This document shows, one piece after another, positions 24,050 to 40,198 of a stretch of DNA of 64,000 nucleotides (position 1 is the first letter of the stretch; the number at the start of each line of letters is the position of its first letter). The DNA is from Salpingoeca rosetta. Lineage: Eukaryota; Protista; Choanoflagellata. Where the stretch lies: the NCBI GenBank assembly GCA_033442325.1, contig JAWQFM010000004.1:815079-879078 (forward strand), given 5' to 3'. The notes under the pieces are model-generated. The model saw nothing but the letters and a program-made list of their open reading frames with translations, was not told the DNA's origin and made no database searches. The translations under genes and the position numbers were made by a program.

Positions 24050-26140
<2,091 letters not shown>

Positions 26141-26725: not shown

Positions 26726-29700
26726 ATGCCTCCGGTAAGCCAGCACATAACACGTGCACATGCACTTGTGTATGTGTGTGTGTGCACGCACGTGTGTGAA
26801 TGCATGTATATGCGTTTTTACTCGTGGCTTTGGAATGACGCATACAAAGACCCACCTTCCTGCACCTGCTTCTCCATCACCATCGCGTGATCGTCCTTGA
26901 CACTGCCTCTCTTCCACCTGCCCGTCTCTCTTTCATCCTCTCATCTTCACACCTCACAACGCGGTCCTGTCAACCACACCTTCCACCCTCTCAACACCAC
27001 ACGCACAGCCCTTGAAGTGGGCAGGGTCCACGACCTCGATGGAGGGCCGCCTGATGGTTGCCGTGCACGAGGTGATTGAGCTGAACCTCCAGCCAAACGA
27101 GACACTGGGCCTGCGCGTGTCTGGCGGTACCGACACAGTGGACGAGGGTGAGGACCCCGGCCTGTTTGTGGAGGAAGTCCTGGAGGGCGCCGGCAGCCGC
27201 GACGGCCGCATCAAGGTCGACGACAAGATCATCGAGGTGAACGGCACGCGCCTTGGCGAGCGCACGCACGAGGAGTACATGGGCGTGCTCACGGAGGCCG
27301 TTGGTAGCCTGAACGTGGTGCTGCTCGTGAGCCGCATGCGCGAAGTTGGCTCCGTCTCCTGGGAGGAGTTCTTCGCGGGCCGATACGGCCACATGACCAC
27401 GCAGGGCCGGTACGCGTCAGGGTCCATTGCCTACGTCAGCGAGGGCTTTGGCGTCGTGGAGCTTGAGCAGAGCGCATCAGAGACGTTTGGTCTCGCGCTG
27501 GCCGGCGCCAAGAGCAAAGAGGAGGCACGTGTTGCTGCGGGTGTGTACATTGCCGCCATCCGCGCCGGTGGCCCCGCAGCCGCAGCGGCTATTGACGGCA
27601 CGCTGTCTCGCGGCCAGCAGATTGTGGAGATCAATGGGTGGGCGTGTGCGCGCGCCACCGTGGCGGAGGTGGAGCTGCTTCTCAACCGGTTTGCACGCGC
27701 CACCATCGTTGTGAAGGAGAACCCCGAGGGCTTCCTGCCGTTCTCCGACGAGAGCCTGAACCGGTATTACGCGCCGCTCACCGTCGACGGGCAGGAGGCG
27801 ACCACGGAGTCTCTTCGACAGGTCTCGCTGCCGTTTGACCCGACCGGCAACACGAAGCTTGGCCTGCGCATCATCGGCGTGCCGCCCAACACCAAGTTTG
27901 ATGCGCACGGCGTGTTTGTCAATGGCTGTGCACCGGGCACGGCCGCAGCCGACCGCCTCAACGTCGGCGACCAGATCATCGGTGGGATTGCTTGTGTGTG
28001 TGTAAATGTGTATGAATGTGTGTATGAATATGAACGTGTGAATATGTGTGCGTGTGTGCGTGTGTGTGTGTGTGTAACACATGTGTGTGCAACGCATGTG
28101 TGTGTAACACATGTGTGTGCAACGCATGTGTGTGAACATGTGAATATGCGTGTGTATGTGTATGAACATGTTTGTTTCTGTGGCGCGCATGTGTACGTAA
28201 CCCTGCGTGTGACTGCATGTGCCTCGATCTTCGTCCCGCGCCGTCCTTGCTCACCATGCCCCTCCCTCCCACACGTCTCCACCCCCGACCCCCTTCCTCT
28301 GTGATCCAGAGATCAACGGGTGCACGCTCGCTGGCGCCACGCACGACGTTGCCGCCAACACGCTGCGTGCGTCCAAGGGCACGGCCAAGCTGCTTGTGGT
28401 ACACAACGCCCCCGGCTACGAATACATGACGCGCATGGTCGAGGAGCACGAGCGCGAGCTTGACCAGGACCCGGACGCCCGCCGCCACATCAAGGATGTG
28501 CTCGTGCCAGACGTGCGCATCCCAGAGGTGCAGACGGTCCGCGACGCCGACGCGCAGGAAAACAAGGTGGTGGTGCGGGTGGCACGGCCCGTGGGCCAGC
28601 CAATTGGCGTCACCATCCACGTGCGGGAGGTGGCTGGGCGCCGCATCCCGCTCATCACCAACGTCAGCGCAGGCAGCGTGGCCGCCGACACGGGCAAGCT
28701 GCGCGTGGGGCAGCAAGTGTTCGCGCTCAACACCACCGCGCTCTCCGAAAACACACCGCACAGGGACATTGAGAACGTGCTTGCAGACACGTCACTGGAC
28801 CACATTGAGCTGACAGTCTCTGCAGAGCCCGTCGTGGACGTGAGCGAGCTGCTCGCCAACCTCATCCTCACCCACACGTCCACCGCCATCTCCCACCAGC
28901 ACGTGCGCCTGGTGCGCATCCCAGACAACATCAACGGGCTCGGCTTTGCCTTTGTTGGCCCGAGCGAGGAGAGCGGGCTGGCGCCGTTTGGTGCGTACGT
29001 GTCGCGCACGACCGTGGGTGAGCTCAACACGGGGGACCAGCTCCTGGCCGTCTCCTCCAACAACCACGGCAAGTTTGAGTGCTTGTTTGACTGCTCATAC
29101 AAGAAGGCCATGTCGCTGCTGATGCGGGCGAAGATGGCGCGGGAGACATACCTCGTCGTGTGCTCCAACCCGGAGGGGTACGCGTTCTTCTCTGCAATGA
29201 CGACCAACAGCGTGGACCTGGAGCAGGTGCTGCCGCCGCCCATCTCACCCCGCGCCGCCGTCGCCGCCGTCAGGGAGTCGGTCGCCGCTGAACACCAGCG
29301 CAGACAGCAGCAGCAGCAGCATCAGCAGCAGCAGCAAGGGGAGGAGAAGCAGGATACAGAGAAGGGACAGGAGCGCATCGATGGTGAGAGTGGGGAGCAA
29401 CGTCAGGGTGAGGGCGGCCATGCACAGGCGGAATCAACAGAGGTCCAAGGCGAGCAAGGCGAGGGTGTTGCCGCAGCTACTTCTGACAAGAGTGCAGAGC
29501 AGCCAGCGGGTGTCGAATCGCAACCCGCCACAGCCGCTGTGAACGCCACGACAGACTCCGCCACCGCTGCTGGCCCGGCACACACGGCCAACGCCAGCAT
29601 GACGGCGCCGCCGCAGCGCTCGTCCTTCTTCACCGTCACAGAGGCGCCCTTCCACGTGCGGGCGCACTTTGCGTGGGTGCCGCAGAACGAGACGCAGCTT

Positions 29701-29966
29701 GGGTTTGCCGAGCGCGACGTGCTGCGTGTCGAAGAGCTTCTCTCTGGCGACTTTTGGGTGGCCACACACCTTGGCACGGGCGCACGGGGCCAGATCCCGT
29801 CTGCCGCGTACTACGAGGAGTTTTTCAAGGCGACACCGCTGTGGCAGCAGAAGCTGCACATTGCGCAGACGATTGACCAGACCATGCGCGACGCCGACGA
29901 GGCGGTTAGTTTGTTTTGTTATTGTGTGTTGGAGGGGGGAGCGAGGATGGGCTCTCTTGCTTGTGT

Positions 29967-30014
<48 letters not shown>

Positions 30015-31087
30015 GCGTTGTTTTGTTTGTGTGCTTCGATGGCGAGGTGCGCATTCGGAACCCCGCAATGCTCTTTAACACCGACATGTCATGCACACAT
30101 GCGCACATGCGCACATCTTGACCAGACGCGCAAGGAGGCGCGCGACGACGTGCTGACGGTGCACTCGTACACGGTGGTGGAGTGGCAGCAGCTCGAAGGG
30201 GCCGTGCGCCCGCTGGCCGTGTTTGGCATGGAGGCTCACAAGGTGATGGTGGGCGCAATGCACCTCCTCCCAGACATGGCCATTGCCACGCCGCTGCGCT
30301 GCACAAGCCGCCCCATGCGTGACGGCGAGACAAACGGGCAGGAGTACGAGTTTGTCTCGCGCGAGGAAATGGAGCGCCGTCTTGCTGCGAAAGAACTCAT
30401 TGAAGTCGGCAGCTTCAAGGTCCGGCAGTTGTGGGCGTTGCCTTATTGCTGGTGTGCTTGTGAACTTGGTTGTGTGTGCACGCATGTGTGCGTGTGTGTG
30501 TGTGCACGTACGTGCGTGCATGTGTGTGTGTGTGTGTACGCGTGTGTGCACGTGTGTGCGTGTGTATGTGCTAACTTGTGCGCGCAGACATTACAAATCA
30601 CACGCTGCCTCTTCCAGATCCACCGCGCTTGCCTCACACACGCACACACACACAACACATGCTCTGCAATTTTACACCTACCCCCTTGCTACTCTCCCCT
30701 CTCTACCCCAGGGCAACCTGTATGGCACGACCATCGAGGCTGTTGCAGCCCCTGCGCGTGACGGCAAGCTCGTGCTGATGCAGTGCCACCCACCGGCCAT
30801 TCGTCGCCTGCAGCTCCTGGGCGACATCCACCCGATTGTCGCCTTTGTTGCGCCCGCACCGGAGCGCCTGCAGACACGGGCGGACGGCAGCGCCATCGAC
30901 GAAGCCGCGCAGGCTGCGGCGTGGGAGCAGGTTGAGCACGGCCACACGTTTACACACGTGCTGCAGGAGGGACCCGTGCCCGCACTTGCCCAGCAGGTGG
31001 CAGCCATTGTGAGCGAGGAGGCGAGAGCCGAGGGGCTCTGGGCCGCTGTTCCCGCCCTTCTTCCACGCGCACCGGTGCGTGTCTCGT

Positions 31088-31158
<71 letters not shown>

Positions 31159-32866
31159 AATCTGGTGCATTTTGTGTTTTGTTAACCAACTGTGTCTCCG
31201 CCATCAGTGCTTGATGTCCTGACTTTGTGGTGTTCACTTATTTGTGTCGCATTTATCAAGTCATATGCATCCTTCACTCACCCCTCACTCACGCTTACAC
31301 ACCTCTTGACTGGCCCGCCAGCTGTCGCAGGCCGCATCACCATCCAAGATGTCGCTTGGTCTGACAACGGCCCCGGCAACGCTGGGCAACACGTCCATGA
31401 CAGCTACCAACGCGGTTGACACGAGTACCGCTGCTGCTGCCGCTGGCGCGACTGAAGAGGACGAGTCACTCGCCATGTACTCGCAGTCGACCCAGCTCAA
31501 GTGCGACTTTGAGACGGTCGTGGTGCAGCGGCTCGGCAAGCACAAGTACGGCTTCAAGCTCGTGGCTGATGACGAGACTGGTGTGCCGACTGTTGCGCCC
31601 GGCGACGACATTGTGTATGTCAACGGGTCCTTTGGTGCCGGCGCCCGCGTCCTCTGCGTCGGCGGCCAGAACGTCATTGCAGAATCCTCATCGAAGGTGC
31701 GCGCACGCCTTTCGTGTGTCGATATGTGACCTTGTGTCGTTTTGCGTGTGTGCGTGTGTGTGCACGTGTGTGTGTATGTGTGTGTGCACGTGTATGTTCG
31801 TCCAAGAGCATCTTCTTTCTTGCATCAAGTACAACTCACTTTTGTCCATGCAACACAACCCCCCCCTTCACTTCTTTCTCTCCCTTTCTATGTTCGCGCT
31901 GTAGCTGAAGGATGCGGTGAAGAAGAACACGGAGACGCTGAGCGTGGTCCTGTTCCCGCGGCACCTCAACGTGCGCGCCGTCAAGCTGAAGAAGCGCAAC
32001 AACACGTTTGGCCTCAAGATGTCCACGCCCGAGGGCTTCCCCGCCACCATCATCACAGGCGTGCCGCAGGAAAACATTGTCCGCGAGGGCTCATGCAGGC
32101 GCGGCGACGCCATCGTGGCCGTGAGTTGTGTATGCGTGTGTGTGCGCGCAAATGTGTGTGTGTGTGTGTGTGCTTGCGCTTGAAGATTCGCGCGTGTGAA
32201 AATGTGTTTGTACCCTCTGTTTGTGCGTGCGCTGCAACTCGCGTGTGAACTGATTCACCGCGCTCCTGTCTTCGTGTTTGCTTTGTGCGGTGCTGCCAGG
32301 TTAACGGCGCGCCGATGCTGCGCTGCTCGCTGGAGGAGGTCACGTCCGCGTTCACACAGCAGAAAACAGCGCGCATCGCCGTTGCAGACGCTGATGACGT
32401 CATGGTGCGAACATCCCATCCCGCCTTGTGCATTCGTGTGCGAACCACTTGTCTGTTTGAAGCGTGCTTGCAGCCTCGACCACGGCCTGAGGGCCTCGAT
32501 TGCGCGTCATTCCCCTGCATACAACAAACCTGAGCATGCACACGCACATCACACACGCACGCGCGTGCACTGAGCTGTCGTCTCTTTCCTCACCCTCGCG
32601 TCCCCACTTGGCTCCATTCTTCATAACAGCTGACGTCCTCTGGGACGAGCCGGCGGGTTGAGCTGCGGCGCTTTCAGACCAATTATGGCCTGGAGATTGC
32701 CATGCTCGACGACCTACCCGTGGTCCTGCGCATTACCGCAGCCACCGTCGCAGCCGCATCCGACCTCAACGTCGGCGACGCCATCTACAAGGTGCTGCAC
32801 CGCCACCCACACAGACGACGCATTGTGGCGTGCACGAAGAGAGAGAGAAAGGGCTTGTGTGTGTTT

Positions 32867-32937
<71 letters not shown>

Positions 32938-35900
32938 CTTGCCCAGTGACAATGCAGGCTTCGTCATCACGTCATCGTTCAACCACACGTATTGCCCCCC
33001 CCCCCCCACTTCGCCACCCCCATCCCCCATCACCCCATCTCCTCCCTGTGTGACTGTAGATCAACGGCATGACGACGCGCAACGCCTCGTACGACACAAT
33101 TATGTCGACGGTGCGCACCAGCGCCACGCTCGACCTCGTTGTCGACAAGTGTCCGCGATTCGCCAGGCGCGAGGTGACGGTTGAGCGCTCCGCCACCGCT
33201 GGCTACGGCATGCATGTGCAGACGACGTTTGGGTACTGCCCTGTTGTGACGCGCGTGGTTGAGGGCAGCCCTGCGGCGACAGGCAACGCCATCCTCCCCG
33301 GCGACGAAATCGTGGAGGTGCGCAGAAGCTGGTGGTGATTGCGGTGGTTGGCTGCGGTGGTGATCGACGAAGTTGTGGTGGTGTTGATCGTGTGGACAGC
33401 ACCCCTCTCTCTCTGCGAGACAATTATCAAGTGGTCATTCACACACACACACACACACCTACACACACACACACATACGCACGCACATACGCACGCACAT
33501 ACGCACGCACACACGCACACGCACCCGTACGTACAGATCAACGGTACGGCCACGCAGGGCAAGATGCACGAGGAAGTGGTTGCAATGCTCTCCCGCGCCA
33601 CCACGGCCAAGCTGTCCCTGCGCCATCCCACCACGCCCACCGCCGCCCCCATGGCGCCGGCGATCGTGCCCGCAGCAGCAACAGCCTCTGAGCAGCAGCA
33701 GCCGACTAAGGAGGAAGAGACGAACAACGATGCGCAGCAGCAAGAAGAGACGCACCAGCAGCCACCGAAGCAGCAAGTTGAGGTGCAAGACGCAAGCGTG
33801 AAGAGCTTCAGTAACGCGCGCAAGGTTGTGTTCCGTGGCGCCTCTGTGTCGCGTCTTGGCCTCAGGTTCCAGCGCGTGGAGGGCGATGCGTTCTTCAAGG
33901 TGGCGGAGGTGCTTGACGGCGGGCTCGCCAAGGAATCTGGTGCCATCAGCCCCGGTGACGCCGTCGCAGAGGTGCGCATGAAGGGGGCGAAGAGGGGGTG
34001 GGGATGGTAGTTTGATGCTCGCAGGTGCGTGAGTTTTTGGGAGCGTGTGTGTTGGCGTGGTTTTGACGTGTGATGACAGTGATGAAGATGTTGCGACAGT
34101 TGAGATTGATGCGTTCCACTTCTGTGGTTCAGCTCATTGCTATTTGCGGGTGAACACCACACTTCAACATACATATCGCTGTCACCCTGTGCCAGGTAAA
34201 CGGCATTGCGTTCAACACGCGCGAGGGACTGGCCCGCGCCCTCAGTGCTGCGGAGGACACCGTCTCCATTGTTGTCGGCACACCACGACAGGAACAAGCA
34301 GGCGCCGTGAGTTGCTACATATGTTCGTGTGGGGCTGCATGCAAGTGCGTGGTGGCGTGCTGCAATGTTGATGACCATTATCGCTCCTCTCCTCGCTCAC
34401 ATACCCCTATCATGCTTCTCGATCTGCCCTCCTCGTGCGTGTTTGCGCTTGAGCAGCGCGTTGTGCTCGATACGCACAGCGAGCGGCTTGGCCTGAAGAT
34501 TGTGTGTGTGCAGGACTCGTTCCCCATTGTTTCGGTAGTTGATGCTGACGGCGCCGCCGCCAAGGAGCCCGCACTCGTCCCCGGCGTCACCATCCTCAAG
34601 GTGCACACGAATCACAGGCACTGCTCTCGAGATGACACGTGCATGGTTGTTTGCCATGTGGCGTCGATTAGACGCCTAATGCGTGCATACTCGTGTTTGT
34701 TATCTGCCATGTAAATCTGACTTCCAACTCACGTCATTGGCCGCCTGTTCACCCTCCCCAAACACAACTATCACATCATCGTCATGTCCCCCACCCACCC
34801 CTTGTTGCGTTACGCAGGTGAACGGCCGGGATATGCATGGTGCGACGAGTGAGGACCTGCGGGCAGCGTTGGCTGCCTCGTCCCTCATTGAACTCGTCCT
34901 CGGCGATCGCGTATCGCTCCCTCAACCGCCACAGGAGCAGGAGCAGCAACAGGGGGAGGGCTCACAGGGTGGAGGTACCAACCTGCACCCCATTCGCATT
35001 GCGCGCATTACGCCTGTGGAGGGCGAGAGCCTCGGCATTGCCATCCGCACGCACGAGGGTACTGACCTGTGCCCCGTTGTTCCGGCCATCATCGCTGGCT
35101 CCCTCGCAGAGAAGGAGGGCACAATCACGGCTGGCGACGAAATTGTCACCGTGCGTCTGCATACTTGCGCGCGTGTGTGTGCGTGTGTGTGTGTGTGTGT
35201 GTCTGTGTGTCTGTGTGTCTGTGTGTCTGTGCGCGTGTGTGTACGCAAGTGGTTGTCATTTTCGTTTCCTTCTTTATCGCTCTCATCCCTTCTATGTCTC
35301 TTTGCCGCACCAGATCAACGGCACACCTACGAGCGGCCTGACCCATGAGGGCGTGGTTGCGCTGCTCAAGCAGCCACGTGACGTCATCGAGATTGGTGTG
35401 CGCCAGTCCCTGCAGGCGGTGCGTTGACCAATGTGCTCATTCATGTGTTGATTCCGCTTCTGTTTCGTTTCTTCCTGTCATGCTCGTCTTTGACGATCAC
35501 ACTCATCTTGTACTGTCATGCTGGGACTGTTCTCTGCCGTCGCGTCACCGTTTACGATGTGTTTCACACTGTCGTCAACTCCTCGCTCCTCCCCTTCTTC
35601 TTTCTGGTTTTCAGCTTGAGCCGTTTGAGGCTGCACAGAGCAATGTCGTGCGCCTGGAGAAGTCTGGTGGTGCCTTTGGCCTCAACCTCATCACCGCCGA
35701 GCGCGTGCCCGCGGTTGTGGTCGGTATTGCCCCTAACAGCGCAGCGCAGCACTCAAATGCATTTGCCGTTGGTGACGTCATCATGAAGGTGCGTGCGTGT
35801 GTGCGTGTGTGTGTGTGTGCGTGCGTGTGTGCGTGCGTGTGAGTGTGGGTGTGTGTGTGTGCGTGTGTGTGTATGTGTGTGTATGTGCGTGGTTGTTTGC

Positions 35901-37211
35901 GTGCACATGCGCGTTGGAATCGTCCCTGCCTTGCAAGGTGGTGGAGACTCTTTAGGCATGCCCGCTGCGCATGTGCTTGTGCTTGTCACCGAGCACCCCA
36001 ATAATTTCCCTCTCGCCAATCGTGTATTCTCACTCACCGTTTGCATACTTTCCATGATTCACGTCCCACCCCTCTTCCTCTTGGCGCTGCAGATCAATGG
36101 CGAGTCCACAGTCGACCTGACTCACGACGAGCTCGTCAGCATCTTCCGCTCCTCCGACATGGTTGAGCTTGAGTCTGCGCCGCGTGAGGACGGTGAGGTG
36201 AAGGCTGTGGAGGCGACGCGCGGGCCCAGCGGCCTTGGCCTGGTCATCAAGTCGGATGATCGCGGTAACTCGTTTATCACCAAGGTCGCAGAGGGCTCAC
36301 CTGCCGCAGACGCTGGCGTCCCCCTCTTTGCCAAGATCCTGGCGGTGCGTTACAGTGTGCATGTGTGTGCGCATGTATGTGTGTGCATGTGTGCGTGCGT
36401 GTTTGCATGTGTGTGCGTGCGTGTTTGCATGTGTGCGCATGTGTATATGTGCACATGTTTGTGTGTGTGGATGTATGTGCTTAAATATGTGTGCGCGCTC
36501 TTGTTCTTGGGTACAATGCTGACAATCCGCGCACTGCCACTTAACATCCTTCCCTTTTCCCCTTCCCAACTGCAGGTGAACAACTCGCCTGTGATTGGTC
36601 TGTCACATGACGATGTTGTGGCGCACCTTCGCGCCACCACCGTCTCCCTGCTCCTCCGCTGTCCCGCCGGTCCCGTCACCGCTGACATGTACGTGCGCTC
36701 TGTACGAGCTCTGATTGTATAGTTATTTTGTGCGTGTGGTGTTGATAAACCCAGGCCATGCATGCCTTAACCTCTTCATACCTTTCAGCTCACAGTATTC
36801 GCCCTTGCGTTTTCACTGTGCTTCATCGCTGTCACGTACAGGTTTGACATGAGGATGGACCAACCAGCAGTACCACCGTCAGCATCGCAGCAGCAGGCGG
36901 CGGCAGCGCAGGGCGAGGCAACCCAAACAGCAGCAGCGGCAGATAAAGAGGAGGATTCGTCCACTGCCGCGCCGCCCTCGTATGACGACGTTGGTGGCGG
37001 CGATGAGGGTGACGCAAACACCCGGGTTGTGACGCTCACGCGTGGCGAGCGAGGCTACGGCTTCCGGCTCATCACCAACGAGGACCACGCGTCGCCGATT
37101 GTGATTGAGGCGCTGCCAAACACGCCCGCCACCAACGTCCTCCGTCCCGGCGACGCAATCCTATCCGTGAGTTGACCAGCGAGAGCGAGAGATGGTGATG
37201 GTGATGATGCG

Positions 37212-37253
<42 letters not shown>

Positions 37254-38736
37254 CGCGTGTGTGTATGTGTATGTGTGTGTGTGCGTGCGTGTGCGTGTGT
37301 GTGTGTGTGTGTTCCGTGCAGCAATAGTCTCGCTTCTCACACCACTTCACCCGCGCTTCAGATCAACGGCACGTCAACTGCGAATCTGACACACGAGGAA
37401 GTGCTTGCGCTGATCCAGAGTGCCGGCAGCATCAACCTGCGCGTCAGGCACGACGGCGACGTCTTCTTCAACCTCCTCCAAAACTCTCGCCAGCACGAAC
37501 TCGGCACCCCCGTGCCAGGTGCTGTGTGTGGGTGTTACATCTGTCTGTGTGTTCGCGCTCACTGTGTCGCTCTGCATGTGTGTCAGCATATGCGTGCACG
37601 TCACAAGTGCTGCGGTCTTGCCTTTTGCCCCCCCCCCCCACAACCAACCCTCGACCGCTCAAACCTGTTTCCATCTTTCTTTTCTTTTTTTTTTTTTCCT
37701 TCTTCTTCTTCTTCCCTTCACACCATGCCCTCGCCCCCCCCCCCCATATGCCAATCCGCAACCAATGCAGGTCTCTCCAAGGGCACGCAGACGACGGTGC
37801 TGAAACGTGGTGGTGGCGGTTACGGCCTGCGCATCGAGACGCTGGAGGGTCTTCGCCACATCATTGTGGAGGTGATCCCTGGCGGCGCCGCTGCGGACTC
37901 AAAGCAGGTACACGTCGGGCAGGAGATTCTTGAGATCAATGGTCAGGCTGCTCGCGGCGTGGAGCACAACGGCGTGGTCAGCATGCTGGCGTCCACGGAC
38001 GAGGCGCACGTTAAGCTGACCCTGCCGCCGCAGCTTGGGGACTGCACCCTCGTGCGGCTTCGTCGCGACGACAACGGGAGTCTTGGCCTGAGGCTGCAGA
38101 TGCCGCAGCAGGAGTCGCCGCTGTCGTACCCGATCATCTCCCACGTTGGCGAGCACAACGCCGCGCACCTGCAGCCGGGCGACTTCATCATCCGCGTCAA
38201 CGGCGCCAGCGTGATGGGCAAGCCGCTCGAGGAATTCGCACCCGCGTTCCTGTCTGACCCGGTCGTTGTGGACGTGTACCGCCCGGCGCCGGGCACCGAC
38301 GCCACCGCCGCATCGCCAGAGGCACCGGCCACGACGACAGCGGCGACGGCAGCAGCACAGGACGCGGCCACACCAGCGCAGGAGGCTGGAGAAACGCCGG
38401 CTGACAGCGGTGCTCAATCACAACTGCAGTCGTACACCAGCGAGCAGACGCAGGCACAGGCTTCTGCTGCGACAGCAAACACGCCGGCCACCGAGCAAGC
38501 GCCAGCACAGCAGCAGCAGCAGCAGTCACCGCAGGAGGAGGGTGACGGGCAAGGGGCCCGCAAGACTGTGATACTGCAGCGCACGTCGACTGGGTTTGGG
38601 CTGCAGATTGCCTCACCAAACGAGGAAGGCCCGCACTACCACCAGATTACGCTCGTGCTGCCCACTGCCCGCGTTGTCAGCGGCACCGTTGAGGCGGGCG
38701 ACATCATCGAGCAGGTGGGTCGTGGGCATGTGTGCG

Positions 38737-38772
<36 letters not shown>

Positions 38773-39172
38773 TGTTTGGTGTGTATTGGTATGTTGACTT
38801 GTGTATGTTTAATTGTGTGCGTGAGTGTGCGTGTGTGTGAGTTTCACGATTTGTGCGGTTTTCCAACACATTTCTTCATCCATTCATCACACTTTCATGG
38901 TTCCCTCCTCCTCCCAACAGATCAACGGCGAGGATGTGACTGCGCGCACACACGAGCAGCTTGTGGACATTCTCTCTGGGCAGTCCATGCTGGAGATGGT
39001 GGTACGCAAGCCATCGCCGGAGCAGGCGCAGCTGGCAGAGCCCGTGCAGGCGTTCCAGCAGCTGATGACCCGTACCCAGCAGCAGCCGAACGGCCACGCC
39101 GCTGGTGTTGGTGAGCAGGCCGAGGCACAGGCTGGCACCACAGCTGAGACCGCTCCCGAACAACAACCACAG

Positions 39173-39206
<34 letters not shown>

Positions 39207-40198
39207 AAACTGGCACAGAGCAAGGCGAGGACAAGGGCTATCAGTCACAGTCGGCGGCTGGACGTGCAACGGCTGATACCGGAGCCAACGCAGTTCAACA
39301 GCAGCAGCAGCAGCAGCAGCAGCATGATGCTGATGAGGAGGCCACGGCAGATGCCGGTGATGTGTCTGAACCAACTCCGCAGATTGTCGAAGATGATGCC
39401 ACAGCTCCTCCCGCCCCACCAGCTCGCCGCACGGTGACCGTTGCGAAGAACGAGCGTGGACTTGGGATGAAGTTTCTTGGCCTCGGACAGGGCCTCGGCG
39501 TCATTGTAACCGCCCTCATGCCCGACACACCTGCACACGCATGTCCTGACCTCAACATCTACGACACCATCTGCAAAGTGTGTTTGCCTGCGATGGGGTT
39601 GCTTTTGTGTGTGTGTGTGTGTGTGTGTCTGCGTGTGTGTGTGTGTGTGTGCGTGTGTGTGTGTACGTATGTGTGTGTGTGTGTGTGTGTGTGTGCGTAT
39701 GTGTGTGTATGTGTTTTGCTTGCAATAGGATTGCATTCTTGCGTGAGTGTGCGTGTCTGTTTGTGTATCACCCACACCCTCATGCCGTCCTTTCAAACCC
39801 CCGCTCCCGTGCAGATCAACGGTACGGATGTGCTTGACCTTGAGCACGATGCTGTGCGCGACATTCTTGTGAGCGGCTCCTCCTTTGAGCTTGAGGTGCT
39901 GCCTGCGCCCGCCGCCAAGGTCGCCATCCTCGTCCGCGAGTCCAAGGATGACCCGCTCGGCGTTGCCGTTGTCGACGACGACCACCACCGCGTGCGCGTG
40001 GCCAACGTGTCTGAGGCGGCGCGGTTTGCAGACGCGCAGCTGGAGCCCGGCGAGGAGATTGTGAGCGTCAACCACAGGGACGTGCGGACAATGTCTGCCA
40101 TGCAAGTTGGCGTGTTTATGCGCACGGCATCGGACGTGCTCGTCATTGCGGCCAACCCATGCGCTGACCCGCTGCCAGAGCACGAGACAACCGCTTAG
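26726..40198 (+). CDS. DLG-type MAGUK scaffold: 5 PDZ - SH3 - guanylate-kinase-like - 15 PDZ (20 PDZ total)
   Basis: Probable first exon ATG CCT CCG|gtaagc (26726-26734) splices in frame to 27009. PDZ loops (LGLRV, FGLAL, LGLRI, IGVTI, LGFAF, ...) pair with D-x-I-x-x-I/V-N-G motifs. SH3 FHVRAHFAW...LGFAERDVL...FW...GQIPS at ~29650-29810. GK RPLAVFG...TSRPMRDGETNGQEYEFVSREEM...GNLYGTT at ~30205-31040. A phase-0 intron 31075-31330 links GK to the downstream PDZ array. Ends ...HETTA*. Confidence 0.85.

What the first reader, a model, noticed from the sequence alone, without database searches (positions are those of the whole stretch)
26726..40198. A 20-PDZ MAGUK: DLG-like PDZ-SH3-GK core with 15 extra PDZs after the GK
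Seen: 5 PDZ (27070-29170), SH3, DLG-type GK without a canonical P-loop, then 15 PDZ starting near 31510, 31975, 32655, 33170, 33825, 34457, 34995, 35645, 36200, 37025, 37790, 38045, 38565, 39430 and 39920. Established: DLG/MPP/CASK end at the GK, MAGI lacks SH3, and animal MPDZ/MUPP1 has 13 PDZ. I know of no described MAGUK with this layout. It behaves like a DLG fused to an MPDZ-like array, a candidate pre-animal cortical or junction super-scaffold.
Basis: partly seen in the sequence, partly recalled or inferred. Interest (0 to 1): 0.85.

Follow-up and report, generated by a model that had tools for sequence, protein, structure and literature searches.

The report
Known choanoflagellate 20-PDZ MAGUK-like scaffold gene
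This is one real 23-exon gene of the choanoflagellate Salpingoeca rosetta (PTSG_02659) encoding a giant scaffold protein with 5 PDZ domains, an SH3-guanylate-kinase-like core and 15 more PDZ domains, but the protein and this type of layout are already published, so it is a correct reading rather than a discovery.

Summary
The window encodes S. rosetta PTSG_02659 (XP_004996158.1, UniProt F2U2Y1), 2827 aa. A 23-exon, all GT-AG model (26726-40198, + strand) translates exactly to the database protein.

- 17 pass Pfam's cut-off.
- C2, C1 and N5 are confirmed by profile-profile comparison (about 97%). N5 is also confirmed by an AlphaFold model whose top-listed Foldseek hits are all PDZ domains.
- The SH3-GK core matches DLG1/PSD-95 SH3-GK and lacks a P-loop.

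One gene, not two:
- Without splicing at 31074 the frame runs into a TG repeat.
- In relatives the GK and the PDZ array lie in one uninterrupted ORF. One is a Tara contig with no intron at this junction. Two others are a 2344-aa and an 1880-aa ORF.

The novelty claim fails:
- de Mendoza 2010 described M. brevicollis MAGUK-like proteins with PDZ runs on both sides of SH3-GUK.
- A 2025 MBE paper lists this very accession as "3P-S-N-13P", with an M. brevicollis counterpart "4P-S-N-16P".

New here are only the full PDZ count, the MAGUK-type identity of the "NK" domain, and conservation in uncultured relatives. The "DLG + MPDZ fusion" reading is not supported.

The parts
26726..40198 (+). Whole coding span of PTSG_02659: 23 exons, 22 GT-AG introns (median 222 nt; 19 of 22 phase 0), 2827 codons plus stop. 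Exons: 26726-26734, 27009-27981, 28310-29904, 30126-30419, 30712-31074, 31322-31696, 31905-32120, 32300-32404, 32630-32791, 33060-33317, 33537-33971, 34196-34306, 34457-34600, 34818-35150, 35314-35418, 35615-35788, 36093-36344, 36576-36688, 36842-37166, 37362-37518, 37771-38714, 38921-39577, 39815-40198.
   Evidence: The spliced translation is identical to P0001.
27063..29175 (+). Five N-terminal PDZ domains: N1 27063-27341, N2 27447-27728, N3 27810-28419 (split by intron 27982-28309), N4 28558-28836, N5 28897-29175.
   Evidence: Pfam PDZ at 51.9, 28.5, 52.0 and 24.8 bits for N1-N4. N5 by fold and by profile-profile comparison at 96.7%.
29650..29805 (+). SH3 domain (residues about 775-826), followed by a helical HOOK-like segment up to the GK.
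   Evidence: SH3_9 / SH3_2 at E 0.004-0.007, below cut-off. PDB SH3 hits at about 1e-3. The model aligns with DLG1/PSD-95 SH3-GK. The domain is conserved in P0009 and P0028.
30204..31026 (+). Guanylate-kinase-like domain (residues about 886-1062) without a P-loop, split by intron 30420-30711.
   Evidence: Pfam Guanylate_kin 81.4 bits, profile positions 32-181. Best PDB matches are DLG1, MPP1 and PSD-95 GK. Foldseek GK-only hits have target TM-scores of 0.77-0.79.
31030..31074 (+). Conserved W-x-x-V-P-x-L-L-P-R tail after the GK. It sits where DLG has the last strand of its split SH3 and then ends. It is the last part of exon 5.
   Evidence: Aligns to the C-terminal 'YIW' of DLG1. W, P and P are invariant in six homologues. 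It is modelled at low confidence.
31075..31321 (+). Phase-0 intron between the GK exon and the first post-GK PDZ exon. It holds a 68-nt (TG)n run. If retained, the frame reads through the repeat to a stop at 31183-31185.
   Evidence: The intron is absent in the Tara relative, where one ORF spans the junction.
31505..40165 (+). Fifteen C-terminal PDZ domains: C1 31505-31961, C2 31968-32401, C3 32645-33161, C4 33162-33638, C5 33816-34294, C6 34298-34916, C7 34989-35418, C8 35636-36191, C9 36195-36674, C10 37017-37463, C11 37782-38036, C12 38040-38297, C13 38556-39022, C14 39422-39916, C15 39932-40165. They are separated by Gln/Ala/Thr-rich linkers without Pfam hits.
   Evidence: Pfam PDZ above cut-off for C3-C15. 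C2 hhalign 96.5%. C1 family profile 96.9%. Own-HMM domain table. Coordinates.

Best explanation
The stretch is one protein-coding gene of Salpingoeca rosetta, PTSG_02659. It encodes a 2827-residue cytoplasmic scaffold of the choanoflagellate 'MAGUK-like' class: five PDZ domains, a MAGUK-type SH3-HOOK-GK module, then fifteen more PDZ domains joined by low-complexity linkers.

Shown here: the gene structure, the 20 PDZ homologues, the SH3-GK core, and that GK and the PDZ array belong to one reading frame in several relatives.

Inferred: the GK is not an enzyme, because it has no P-loop. It keeps the Arg-x-x-Arg-x-x-Glu, Tyr and Leu-Tyr-Gly-Thr residues that DLG-type GK domains use to hold a phosphorylated peptide. 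It therefore most likely acts as a phospho-peptide docking site, while each PDZ binds a C-terminal tail. Eleven of the 20 PDZ domains have the class-I histidine at the first position of helix alpha-B, and the rest differ, which suggests a mixed clientele. The protein would thus gather many membrane and signalling proteins on one chain.

The C-terminal array most likely grew by tandem duplication of a PDZ unit that already carried a phase-0 intron just before the [I/V]-N-G motif.
For: - Identity and exact exon map.
- PDZ count.
- SH3-GK.
- No P-loop, with conserved TSRPMRDGE...EYEFV...NLYGTT aligned to DLG1 TTRPKRDYE...DYHFV...HLYGTS.
- One gene, within the window: the unspliced frame after 31074 gives a Cys-Val repeat and then a stop.
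- One gene, Tara contigs L002/L003: one 326-aa ORF runs from the GK through the linker into C1, with no Met in the linker. These contigs share the flanking S. rosetta intron sites.
- One gene, other relatives: P0028 (2344 aa), P0029 (2026 aa), P0030 (1880 aa) and P0009 (2065 aa) each hold GK plus 10-15 PDZ domains. For P0028, P0030 and P0009 the ORF was seen uninterrupted on its contig.
- Expression, weak: the share of 31-mers lying wholly in exons of 29600-33600 is 0.471. Seven RNA-like runs from two studies hold 0.48.
- Duplication: 11 C-terminal PDZ domains share the intron site, and C4/C7/C8/C10/C11 are each other's best matches.
Against: - No S. rosetta transcript-derived protein fragments turned up.
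- The SH3 is below Pfam's cut-off, and the SH3-GK-C1 model has only moderate confidence (mean pLDDT 60).
- The GK hinge position that is Pro in DLG/MPP ('VPHTTR') is Arg here ('PLRCTSR'), so DLG-like peptide binding is not assured.
- One-to-one orthology of the middle PDZ domains with relatives is blurred.
- The relatives' contigs L004/L005 carry 16, not 15, post-GK PDZ domains.
- Function and location are entirely inferred.
Confidence: 0.85

Rival explanations
1. There are two adjacent genes: a DLG-like MAGUK ending after the GK, and a separate 15-PDZ gene starting at ATG 31349. The genome annotation and the reader would have merged them wrongly.
For: There is an in-frame ATG at 31349, just after the acceptor. 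DLG-type proteins end exactly where exon 5 ends. No reads could be laid across the junction.
Against: Exon 5 has no stop. Unspliced read-through enters a (TG)n repeat. The Tara relative has no intron and no Met between the GK and C1 in one ORF. P0028, P0030 and P0009 carry GK and the PDZ array in single uninterrupted ORFs of 1880-2344 codons. The M. brevicollis counterpart is published with the same layout.
Confidence: 0.04
2. It is one locus, but it also produces shorter isoforms. Candidates are a DLG-like form from retention of intron 5 (a stop 36 codons into the intron), a PDZ-only form from an internal start, or use of the alternative in-frame acceptor at 31331.
For: Retention of intron 5 would end the protein shortly after the point where DLG ends. 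AG dinucleotides at both 31321 and 31330 give in-frame acceptors 9 nt apart.
Against: There is no direct evidence for any isoform. The retained-intron tail would be a Cys-Val repeat. The Tara relative cannot make such a form at this site because it has no intron there.
Confidence: 0.2
3. Evolutionary reading of the first reader: the gene arose by fusion of a true DLG orthologue with an MPDZ/PATJ-type multi-PDZ gene.
For: The fusion point coincides with the DLG C-terminus and, in S. rosetta, with an intron. N1-N3 and N5 score higher against PDZ domains of L27-bearing MPDZ-like proteins than against their own paralogues.
Against: - S. rosetta has a separate canonical 3-PDZ DLG (SR1).
- There is no L27 domain.
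- The GK is equidistant from DLG and MPP.
- Most C-terminal PDZ domains are closest to each other, not to MPDZ-like PDZ domains, with no collinearity.
- Eleven of them share one intron site.
- The literature places these genes outside the DLG clade.
Confidence: 0.07

Closest known systems
M. brevicollis MB2 (XP_001742640.1, '4P-S-N-16P') and the M. brevicollis MAGUK-like proteins of de Mendoza et al. 2010
   Same: Runs of PDZ domains on both sides of an SH3 plus GK-like core. About five PDZ domains lie before the core and about sixteen after it. PMC12709283 pairs it with this S. rosetta protein.
   Different: I could not fetch the M. brevicollis sequence, so orthology is taken from the paper and was not tested here. 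The published counts (3+13 for S. rosetta) are lower than the 5+15 found here. The paper calls the kinase-like domain 'NK', whereas here it scores as Guanylate_kin at 81 bits and matches MAGUK GK structures.
Animal DLG1-4 / PSD-95 (PDZ-SH3-GK supramodule)
   Same: A PDZ lies directly before a split-type SH3-HOOK-GK. There is no P-loop. The GMP/phosphate-site residues are conserved. The best PDB sequence and fold matches are DLG1 and PSD-95.
   Different: - There is no L27 domain.
- There are five PDZ domains, not three, before the SH3.
- The chain continues for 1750 residues and 15 PDZ domains after the point where DLG ends.
- The hinge Pro of DLG is Arg here.
- The GK is as close to MPP1 as to DLG1.
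MPDZ/MUPP1 and PATJ/INADL
   Same: A long string of PDZ domains that acts, in animals, as a multivalent junction scaffold.
   Different: Those proteins have an N-terminal L27, no SH3 and no GK, and at most 13 PDZ domains. No specific or collinear PDZ similarity was found.
S. rosetta SR3 (XP_004991902.1, '4P-S-G-P-G-P-N-11P')
   Same: A second giant multi-PDZ MAGUK in the same genome. It may be the gene noted by this scan as s1-440280.
   Different: It is a different gene on another piece of the genome, with several GK copies. It was not examined here.

Membership tests
MAGUK (PDZ-SH3-GK core) | A PDZ domain directly N-terminal to the SH3 | tested here: met
   N5 (residues 524-616) folds as a PDZ with a C-terminal extra helix, as in extended PSD-95 PDZ3. 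Profile match 96.7%.
MAGUK (PDZ-SH3-GK core) | SH3 domain | tested here: met
   Weak by Pfam (E 0.004, below cut-off). The model aligns over about 300 columns with SH3-GK of DLG1/PSD-95 (E 5e-18). PDB SH3 hits at about 1e-3.
MAGUK (PDZ-SH3-GK core) | Guanylate-kinase-like domain with a degenerate P-loop | tested here: met
   Guanylate_kin 81.4 bits, profile positions 32-181 only. The sequence reads FGMEAHK where GxxGxGK would be.
MAGUK (PDZ-SH3-GK core) | Split SH3: the last strand is supplied after the GK | tested here: inconclusive
   The W-x-x-V-P motif aligns with the DLG1 C-terminal strand and is conserved in six homologues. This part of the model has pLDDT below 50.
DLG1-4 subfamily | N-terminal L27, exactly three PDZ domains, and a protein that ends after the GK | tested here: not met
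   No L27 hit. There are five PDZ domains before the SH3. About 1750 residues follow the GK.
DLG1-4 subfamily | SH3-GK groups inside the DLG clade in a tree | not tested
   Animal MAGUK sequences could not be collected with the tools. The PDB ranking is DLG1 4e-19, MPP1 5e-18, PSD-95 1e-17, MPP5 4e-16. Published trees put these genes between or outside the DLG and MPP classes.
MPDZ/PATJ multi-PDZ scaffolds | N-terminal L27 and a PDZ-only chain whose PDZ domains are orthologous in order | tested here: not met
   There is no L27. SH3-GK is present. Most C-terminal PDZ domains are closer to their own paralogues than to the PDZ domains of L27-bearing P0015/P0021, and the matches are not collinear.
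MAGI | GK near the N-terminus followed by WW domains, with no SH3 | tested here: not met
   No WW hit. An SH3 is present. MAGI2 GK is a far weaker match (5e-5) than DLG/MPP.
Choanoflagellate MAGUK-like / 'SH3+NK' multi-PDZ genes (de Mendoza 2010; PMC12709283) | The protein is the published entry, with PDZ runs on both sides of the SH3-GK core | tested here: met
   The accession XP_004996158.1 of P0001 is the 'SR4 3P-S-N-13P' entry of Suppl. Table 4. The layout is verified.

The most novel reading that the evidence does not exclude
The 5-PDZ / SH3-GK / 15-16-PDZ protein is not a lineage oddity. It would be a conserved, choanoflagellate-wide orthologous scaffold, present in S. rosetta, M. brevicollis and at least three uncultured relatives, with fixed end domains (N1-N5, C1, the last two PDZ domains) and a freely duplicating middle. 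Its GK would have kept phospho-peptide docking without the hinge proline that is thought to have created that function in animals. That would make it an independent test case for how GK enzymes became binding domains.
Probability: 0.2. Interest if true: 0.5.

Novelty: already known. Interest (0 to 1): 0.22.

Why it matters
This matters only modestly. The gene answers a question left open in 2010: whether the odd M. brevicollis MAGUK-like layouts exist in other choanoflagellates. The answer was already implicit in the 2025 paper that lists this accession.

- A corrected domain count of 20 PDZ folds, against the 16 reported.
- Evidence that the 'NK' domain is a bona fide P-loop-less MAGUK GK with its phosphate-site residues kept.
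- An exact GT-AG exon map.
- The shared phase-0 intron that marks internal PDZ duplication.
- Proof from uninterrupted ORFs in uncultured relatives that the GK and the PDZ array are one protein.

S. rosetta is genetically tractable, so the protein is a reasonable target for tagging. It does not open a new kind of system.

Tried and rejected
These places are a TG-rich part of intron 4. I worked with the spliced protein P0001 and with window pieces elsewhere. Only local scripts computed exon and intron statistics over them.
- A search for S. rosetta transcript-derived protein fragments spanning the junction found none, only the Tara relative P0027.
- I tried to gather animal MAGUK sequences for an SH3-GK tree. 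A profile search returned only family fragments and bacterial guanylate kinases. The remaining hits have PDZ and/or SH3 but no GK. No tree was built.
- One-to-one PDZ orthology with relatives is clear only for N1-N3, N5, C1 and C14. It is blurred in the middle of the array, so I do not claim a conserved count. The relatives' contigs L004/L005 have 16 post-GK PDZ domains.
- My own splice-site dynamic-programming model recovered a single chain of 21 exons, including the 31074/31322 junction. It missed one exon and misplaced a few splice sites, so I replaced it with the exact map of P0001.
- Full-text searches for PTSG_02659, F2U2Y1, XP_004996158, EGD81975 and XP_001742640 found nothing. The accession appears only in a supplement.
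- Gao et al. 2020 (PMC7586902) is not held.

Full report
**What is there**

The + strand between 26.7 and 40.2 kb is a chain of open stretches separated by short TG-rich gaps. A HMMER search with the longest exon found a 2827-aa protein, P0001, as the top hit. The exon's 531 aligned residues lie at P0001 residues 330-860. P0001 maps back to the window without a mismatch. It is NCBI 'hypothetical protein PTSG_02659 [Salpingoeca rosetta]', with accessions EGD81975.1, XP_004996158.1 and UniProt F2U2Y1, on a 2.08-Mb contig.

After shifting ambiguous junctions to GT-AG, 23 exons (26726-40198) translate exactly to P0001. The 22 introns have a median length of 222 nt. Nineteen are phase 0, and 15 hold (TG)n/(CA)n runs.

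**Domain count**

- Slices of P0001 scanned against Pfam score above the PDZ cut-off for N1-N4 and C3-C15, which is 17 domains.
- C2 is sub-threshold in Pfam (16.5 bits). It matches a profile of the protein's own 17 PDZ domains at 96.5%, E 8e-10.
- N5 and C1 are weak as single sequences. Alignments of their orthologues match the PDZ profile at 96.7% and 96.9% over about 80 columns.
- An AlphaFold model of N5 (pLDDT 76) retrieves only PDZ domains among the 50 listed Foldseek hits. These include PSD-95 PDZ3 with its extra helix and M. brevicollis Dlg PDZ3.
- C1 in the SH3-GK-C1 model has PDZ-like strand and helix order at pLDDT 61-69.
- All 20 have the hydrophobic-Gly-hydrophobic loop, and 11 have His at the first position of helix alpha-B (read).

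**Core**

The GK-like domain scores 81 bits on Guanylate_kin but only from profile position 32 onward, so the P-loop is missing. Its best solved relatives are:
- DLG1 SH3-GK (4e-19)
- MPP1 GK (5e-18)
- PSD-95 (1e-17)
- MPP5 (4e-16)

True guanylate kinases follow at 1e-12, and MAGI2 at 5e-5. The alignment to DLG1 keeps the Arg, Arg, Glu, Tyr and Leu-Tyr-Gly-Thr residues of the GMP/phospho-peptide site. Assigning these residues to phospho-peptide binding rests on my knowledge of the DLG GK literature. One difference stands out: the hinge residue that is Pro in DLG/MPP is Arg here.

The SH3 is weak by sequence. The SH3-GK model, although only moderately confident (pLDDT 60), aligns best with the SH3-GK structures of DLG1 and PSD-95 (E 5e-18). 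After the GK, a conserved W-x-x-V-P-x-L-L-P-R motif sits where DLG has its last SH3 strand and then ends. Exon 5 stops exactly there.

**One gene or two**

The case for one gene therefore rests on other evidence.

1. Exon 5 has no stop. Without splicing, the frame runs into the (TG)n repeat as Cys-Val repeats and stops at 31183-31185.
2. A 326-aa ORF, P0027, on two marine metagenome contigs (one of them Tara Oceans) is 43% identical to the query. It runs without interruption from the GK through the linker into C1. It has no Met in the linker, and it breaks at the same flanking intron sites as S. rosetta.
3. Relatives carry GK and array in single ORFs. P0028 (2344 aa, contig L004) and P0030 (1880 aa, contig L005) hold the GK followed by 15 PDZ domains in uninterrupted ORFs. 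P0029 (2026 aa) shows the same domain order. The more distant P0009 (2065 aa) has 5 PDZ, GK, 10 PDZ and a CAP-Gly.
4. The fraction of 31-mers lying wholly in annotated exons of 29600-33600 is 0.471. Seven RNA-like runs from two studies hold 0.48 of the words. This fits spliced transcripts that carry exons from both sides of the junction. It does not prove contiguity.

My own splice-aware dynamic-programming model also chained the whole region into one frame through 31074/31322.

**How the array arose**

Eleven C-terminal PDZ domains (C2-C10, C13, C14) have a phase-0 intron at the same codon boundary, just before [I/V]-N-G. The N3 intron is 2 nt off that site and is phase 1. C4, C7, C8, C10 and C11 are each other's best matches. 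Most C-terminal PDZ domains score higher against their own paralogues than against the PDZ domains of L27-bearing MPDZ-like proteins, and there is no collinearity. Orthology with relatives is clear for the end domains (N1-N3, N5, C1, C14) and blurred in the middle. The relatives' contigs L004/L005 have 16 post-GK PDZ domains. This fits tandem duplication of an intron-bearing PDZ unit, not capture of an MPDZ gene.

**Comparison with what is known**

- de Mendoza et al. [quoted passage not shown] - The 2025 MBE paper PMC12709283 states that one S. rosetta gene and one M. brevicollis gene have 'PDZ and SH3+NK' architecture. Its Supplementary Table 4 names them: SR4 '3P-S-N-13P' XP_004996158.1, which is this protein, and MB2 '4P-S-N-16P' XP_001742640.1.
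- PMC8512817 cites 1-20 PDZ domains per protein in M. brevicollis.

The protein meets the MAGUK core definition. It fails the DLG1-4 definition: no L27, five PDZ domains, and a long post-GK chain. It also fails the MPDZ/PATJ and MAGI definitions. I could not build the GK tree.

**Surroundings**

Upstream on the + strand, a HECT domain ends near 22.0 kb. A CCCH zinc-finger ORF lies on the minus strand at 24494-25264. Nothing in the flanks changes the reading. Other notes of this scan report two more giant MAGUK genes in this genome. One has FERM, at least 23 PDZ and three GUK domains. The other has a MAGUK core inside a PTPN3/4-type phosphatase. They look like counterparts of de Mendoza's other two M. 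brevicollis types. I did not check them.

**Verdict**

The mechanism (a multivalent PDZ scaffold with a non-catalytic, probably phospho-peptide-binding GK) is inferred. The architecture is already known. Interest is low to moderate.

Noticed in passing
window 32120/32300, 32791/33060, 33317/33537, 33971/34196, 34600/34818, 35150/35314, 35788/36093, 36344/36576, 37166/37362, 38714/38921, 39577/39815: Eleven C-terminal PDZ domains (C2-C10, C13, C14) are split by a phase-0 intron at the same codon boundary, just before the [I/V]-N-G motif. The N3 intron (27981/28310) is 2 nt off that site and is phase 1. Relatives share the site in C2 (L002), N3 (L004) and the last-but-one PDZ (L004/L005).
   Followed up: yes
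window 26735-39814 (introns of the gene): Fifteen of 22 introns contain (TG)n/(CA)n runs of 10-68 nt, and 19 of 22 introns are phase 0. One such TG-rich stretch (30470-30558) tripped the filter of read laying.
   Followed up: partly
window 30300-30330 (GK, residues about 918-926): The hinge position that is Pro in DLG/MPP ('VPHTTR'), and Ser in guanylate kinase enzymes, is Arg in this family ('P-[LV]-R-x-T-[ST]-R', conserved in P0009 and P0027-P0030). It is neither enzyme-like nor animal-GK-like.
   Followed up: partly
window 40184-40195: The protein's own C-terminus ends in Glu-Thr-Thr-Ala. This loosely fits a class-I PDZ-binding tail, so head-to-tail self-binding is conceivable. Conservation could not be checked. 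The equivalent ORFs on L004 and L005 end differently (…EEE, …EEQ).
   Followed up: no
window 31322 and 31331: Two in-frame AG acceptors lie 9 nt apart after intron 5. Alternative use would add or remove three residues (Leu-Ser-Gln).
   Followed up: no
L001:2567-8764 (P0009): A more distant relative (28-34% identity) has a CAP-Gly domain (residues 1867-1933) inserted near the end of its post-GK PDZ array. This hints at a microtubule link in that lineage. A BBS2-like ORF lies upstream on the same contig.
   Followed up: no
A CCCH zinc-finger ORF lies on the minus strand between it and the MAGUK gene.
   Followed up: partly
other pieces of the same genome (scan notes s1-440280, s1-436230): Two further giant MAGUK genes are noted in this genome: FERM + at least 23 PDZ + SH3 + three GUK, and a MAGUK core inside a PTPN3/4-type phosphatase. 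They resemble the other two M. brevicollis MAGUK-like types of de Mendoza 2010, and the first perhaps SR3 (XP_004991902.1).
   Followed up: no
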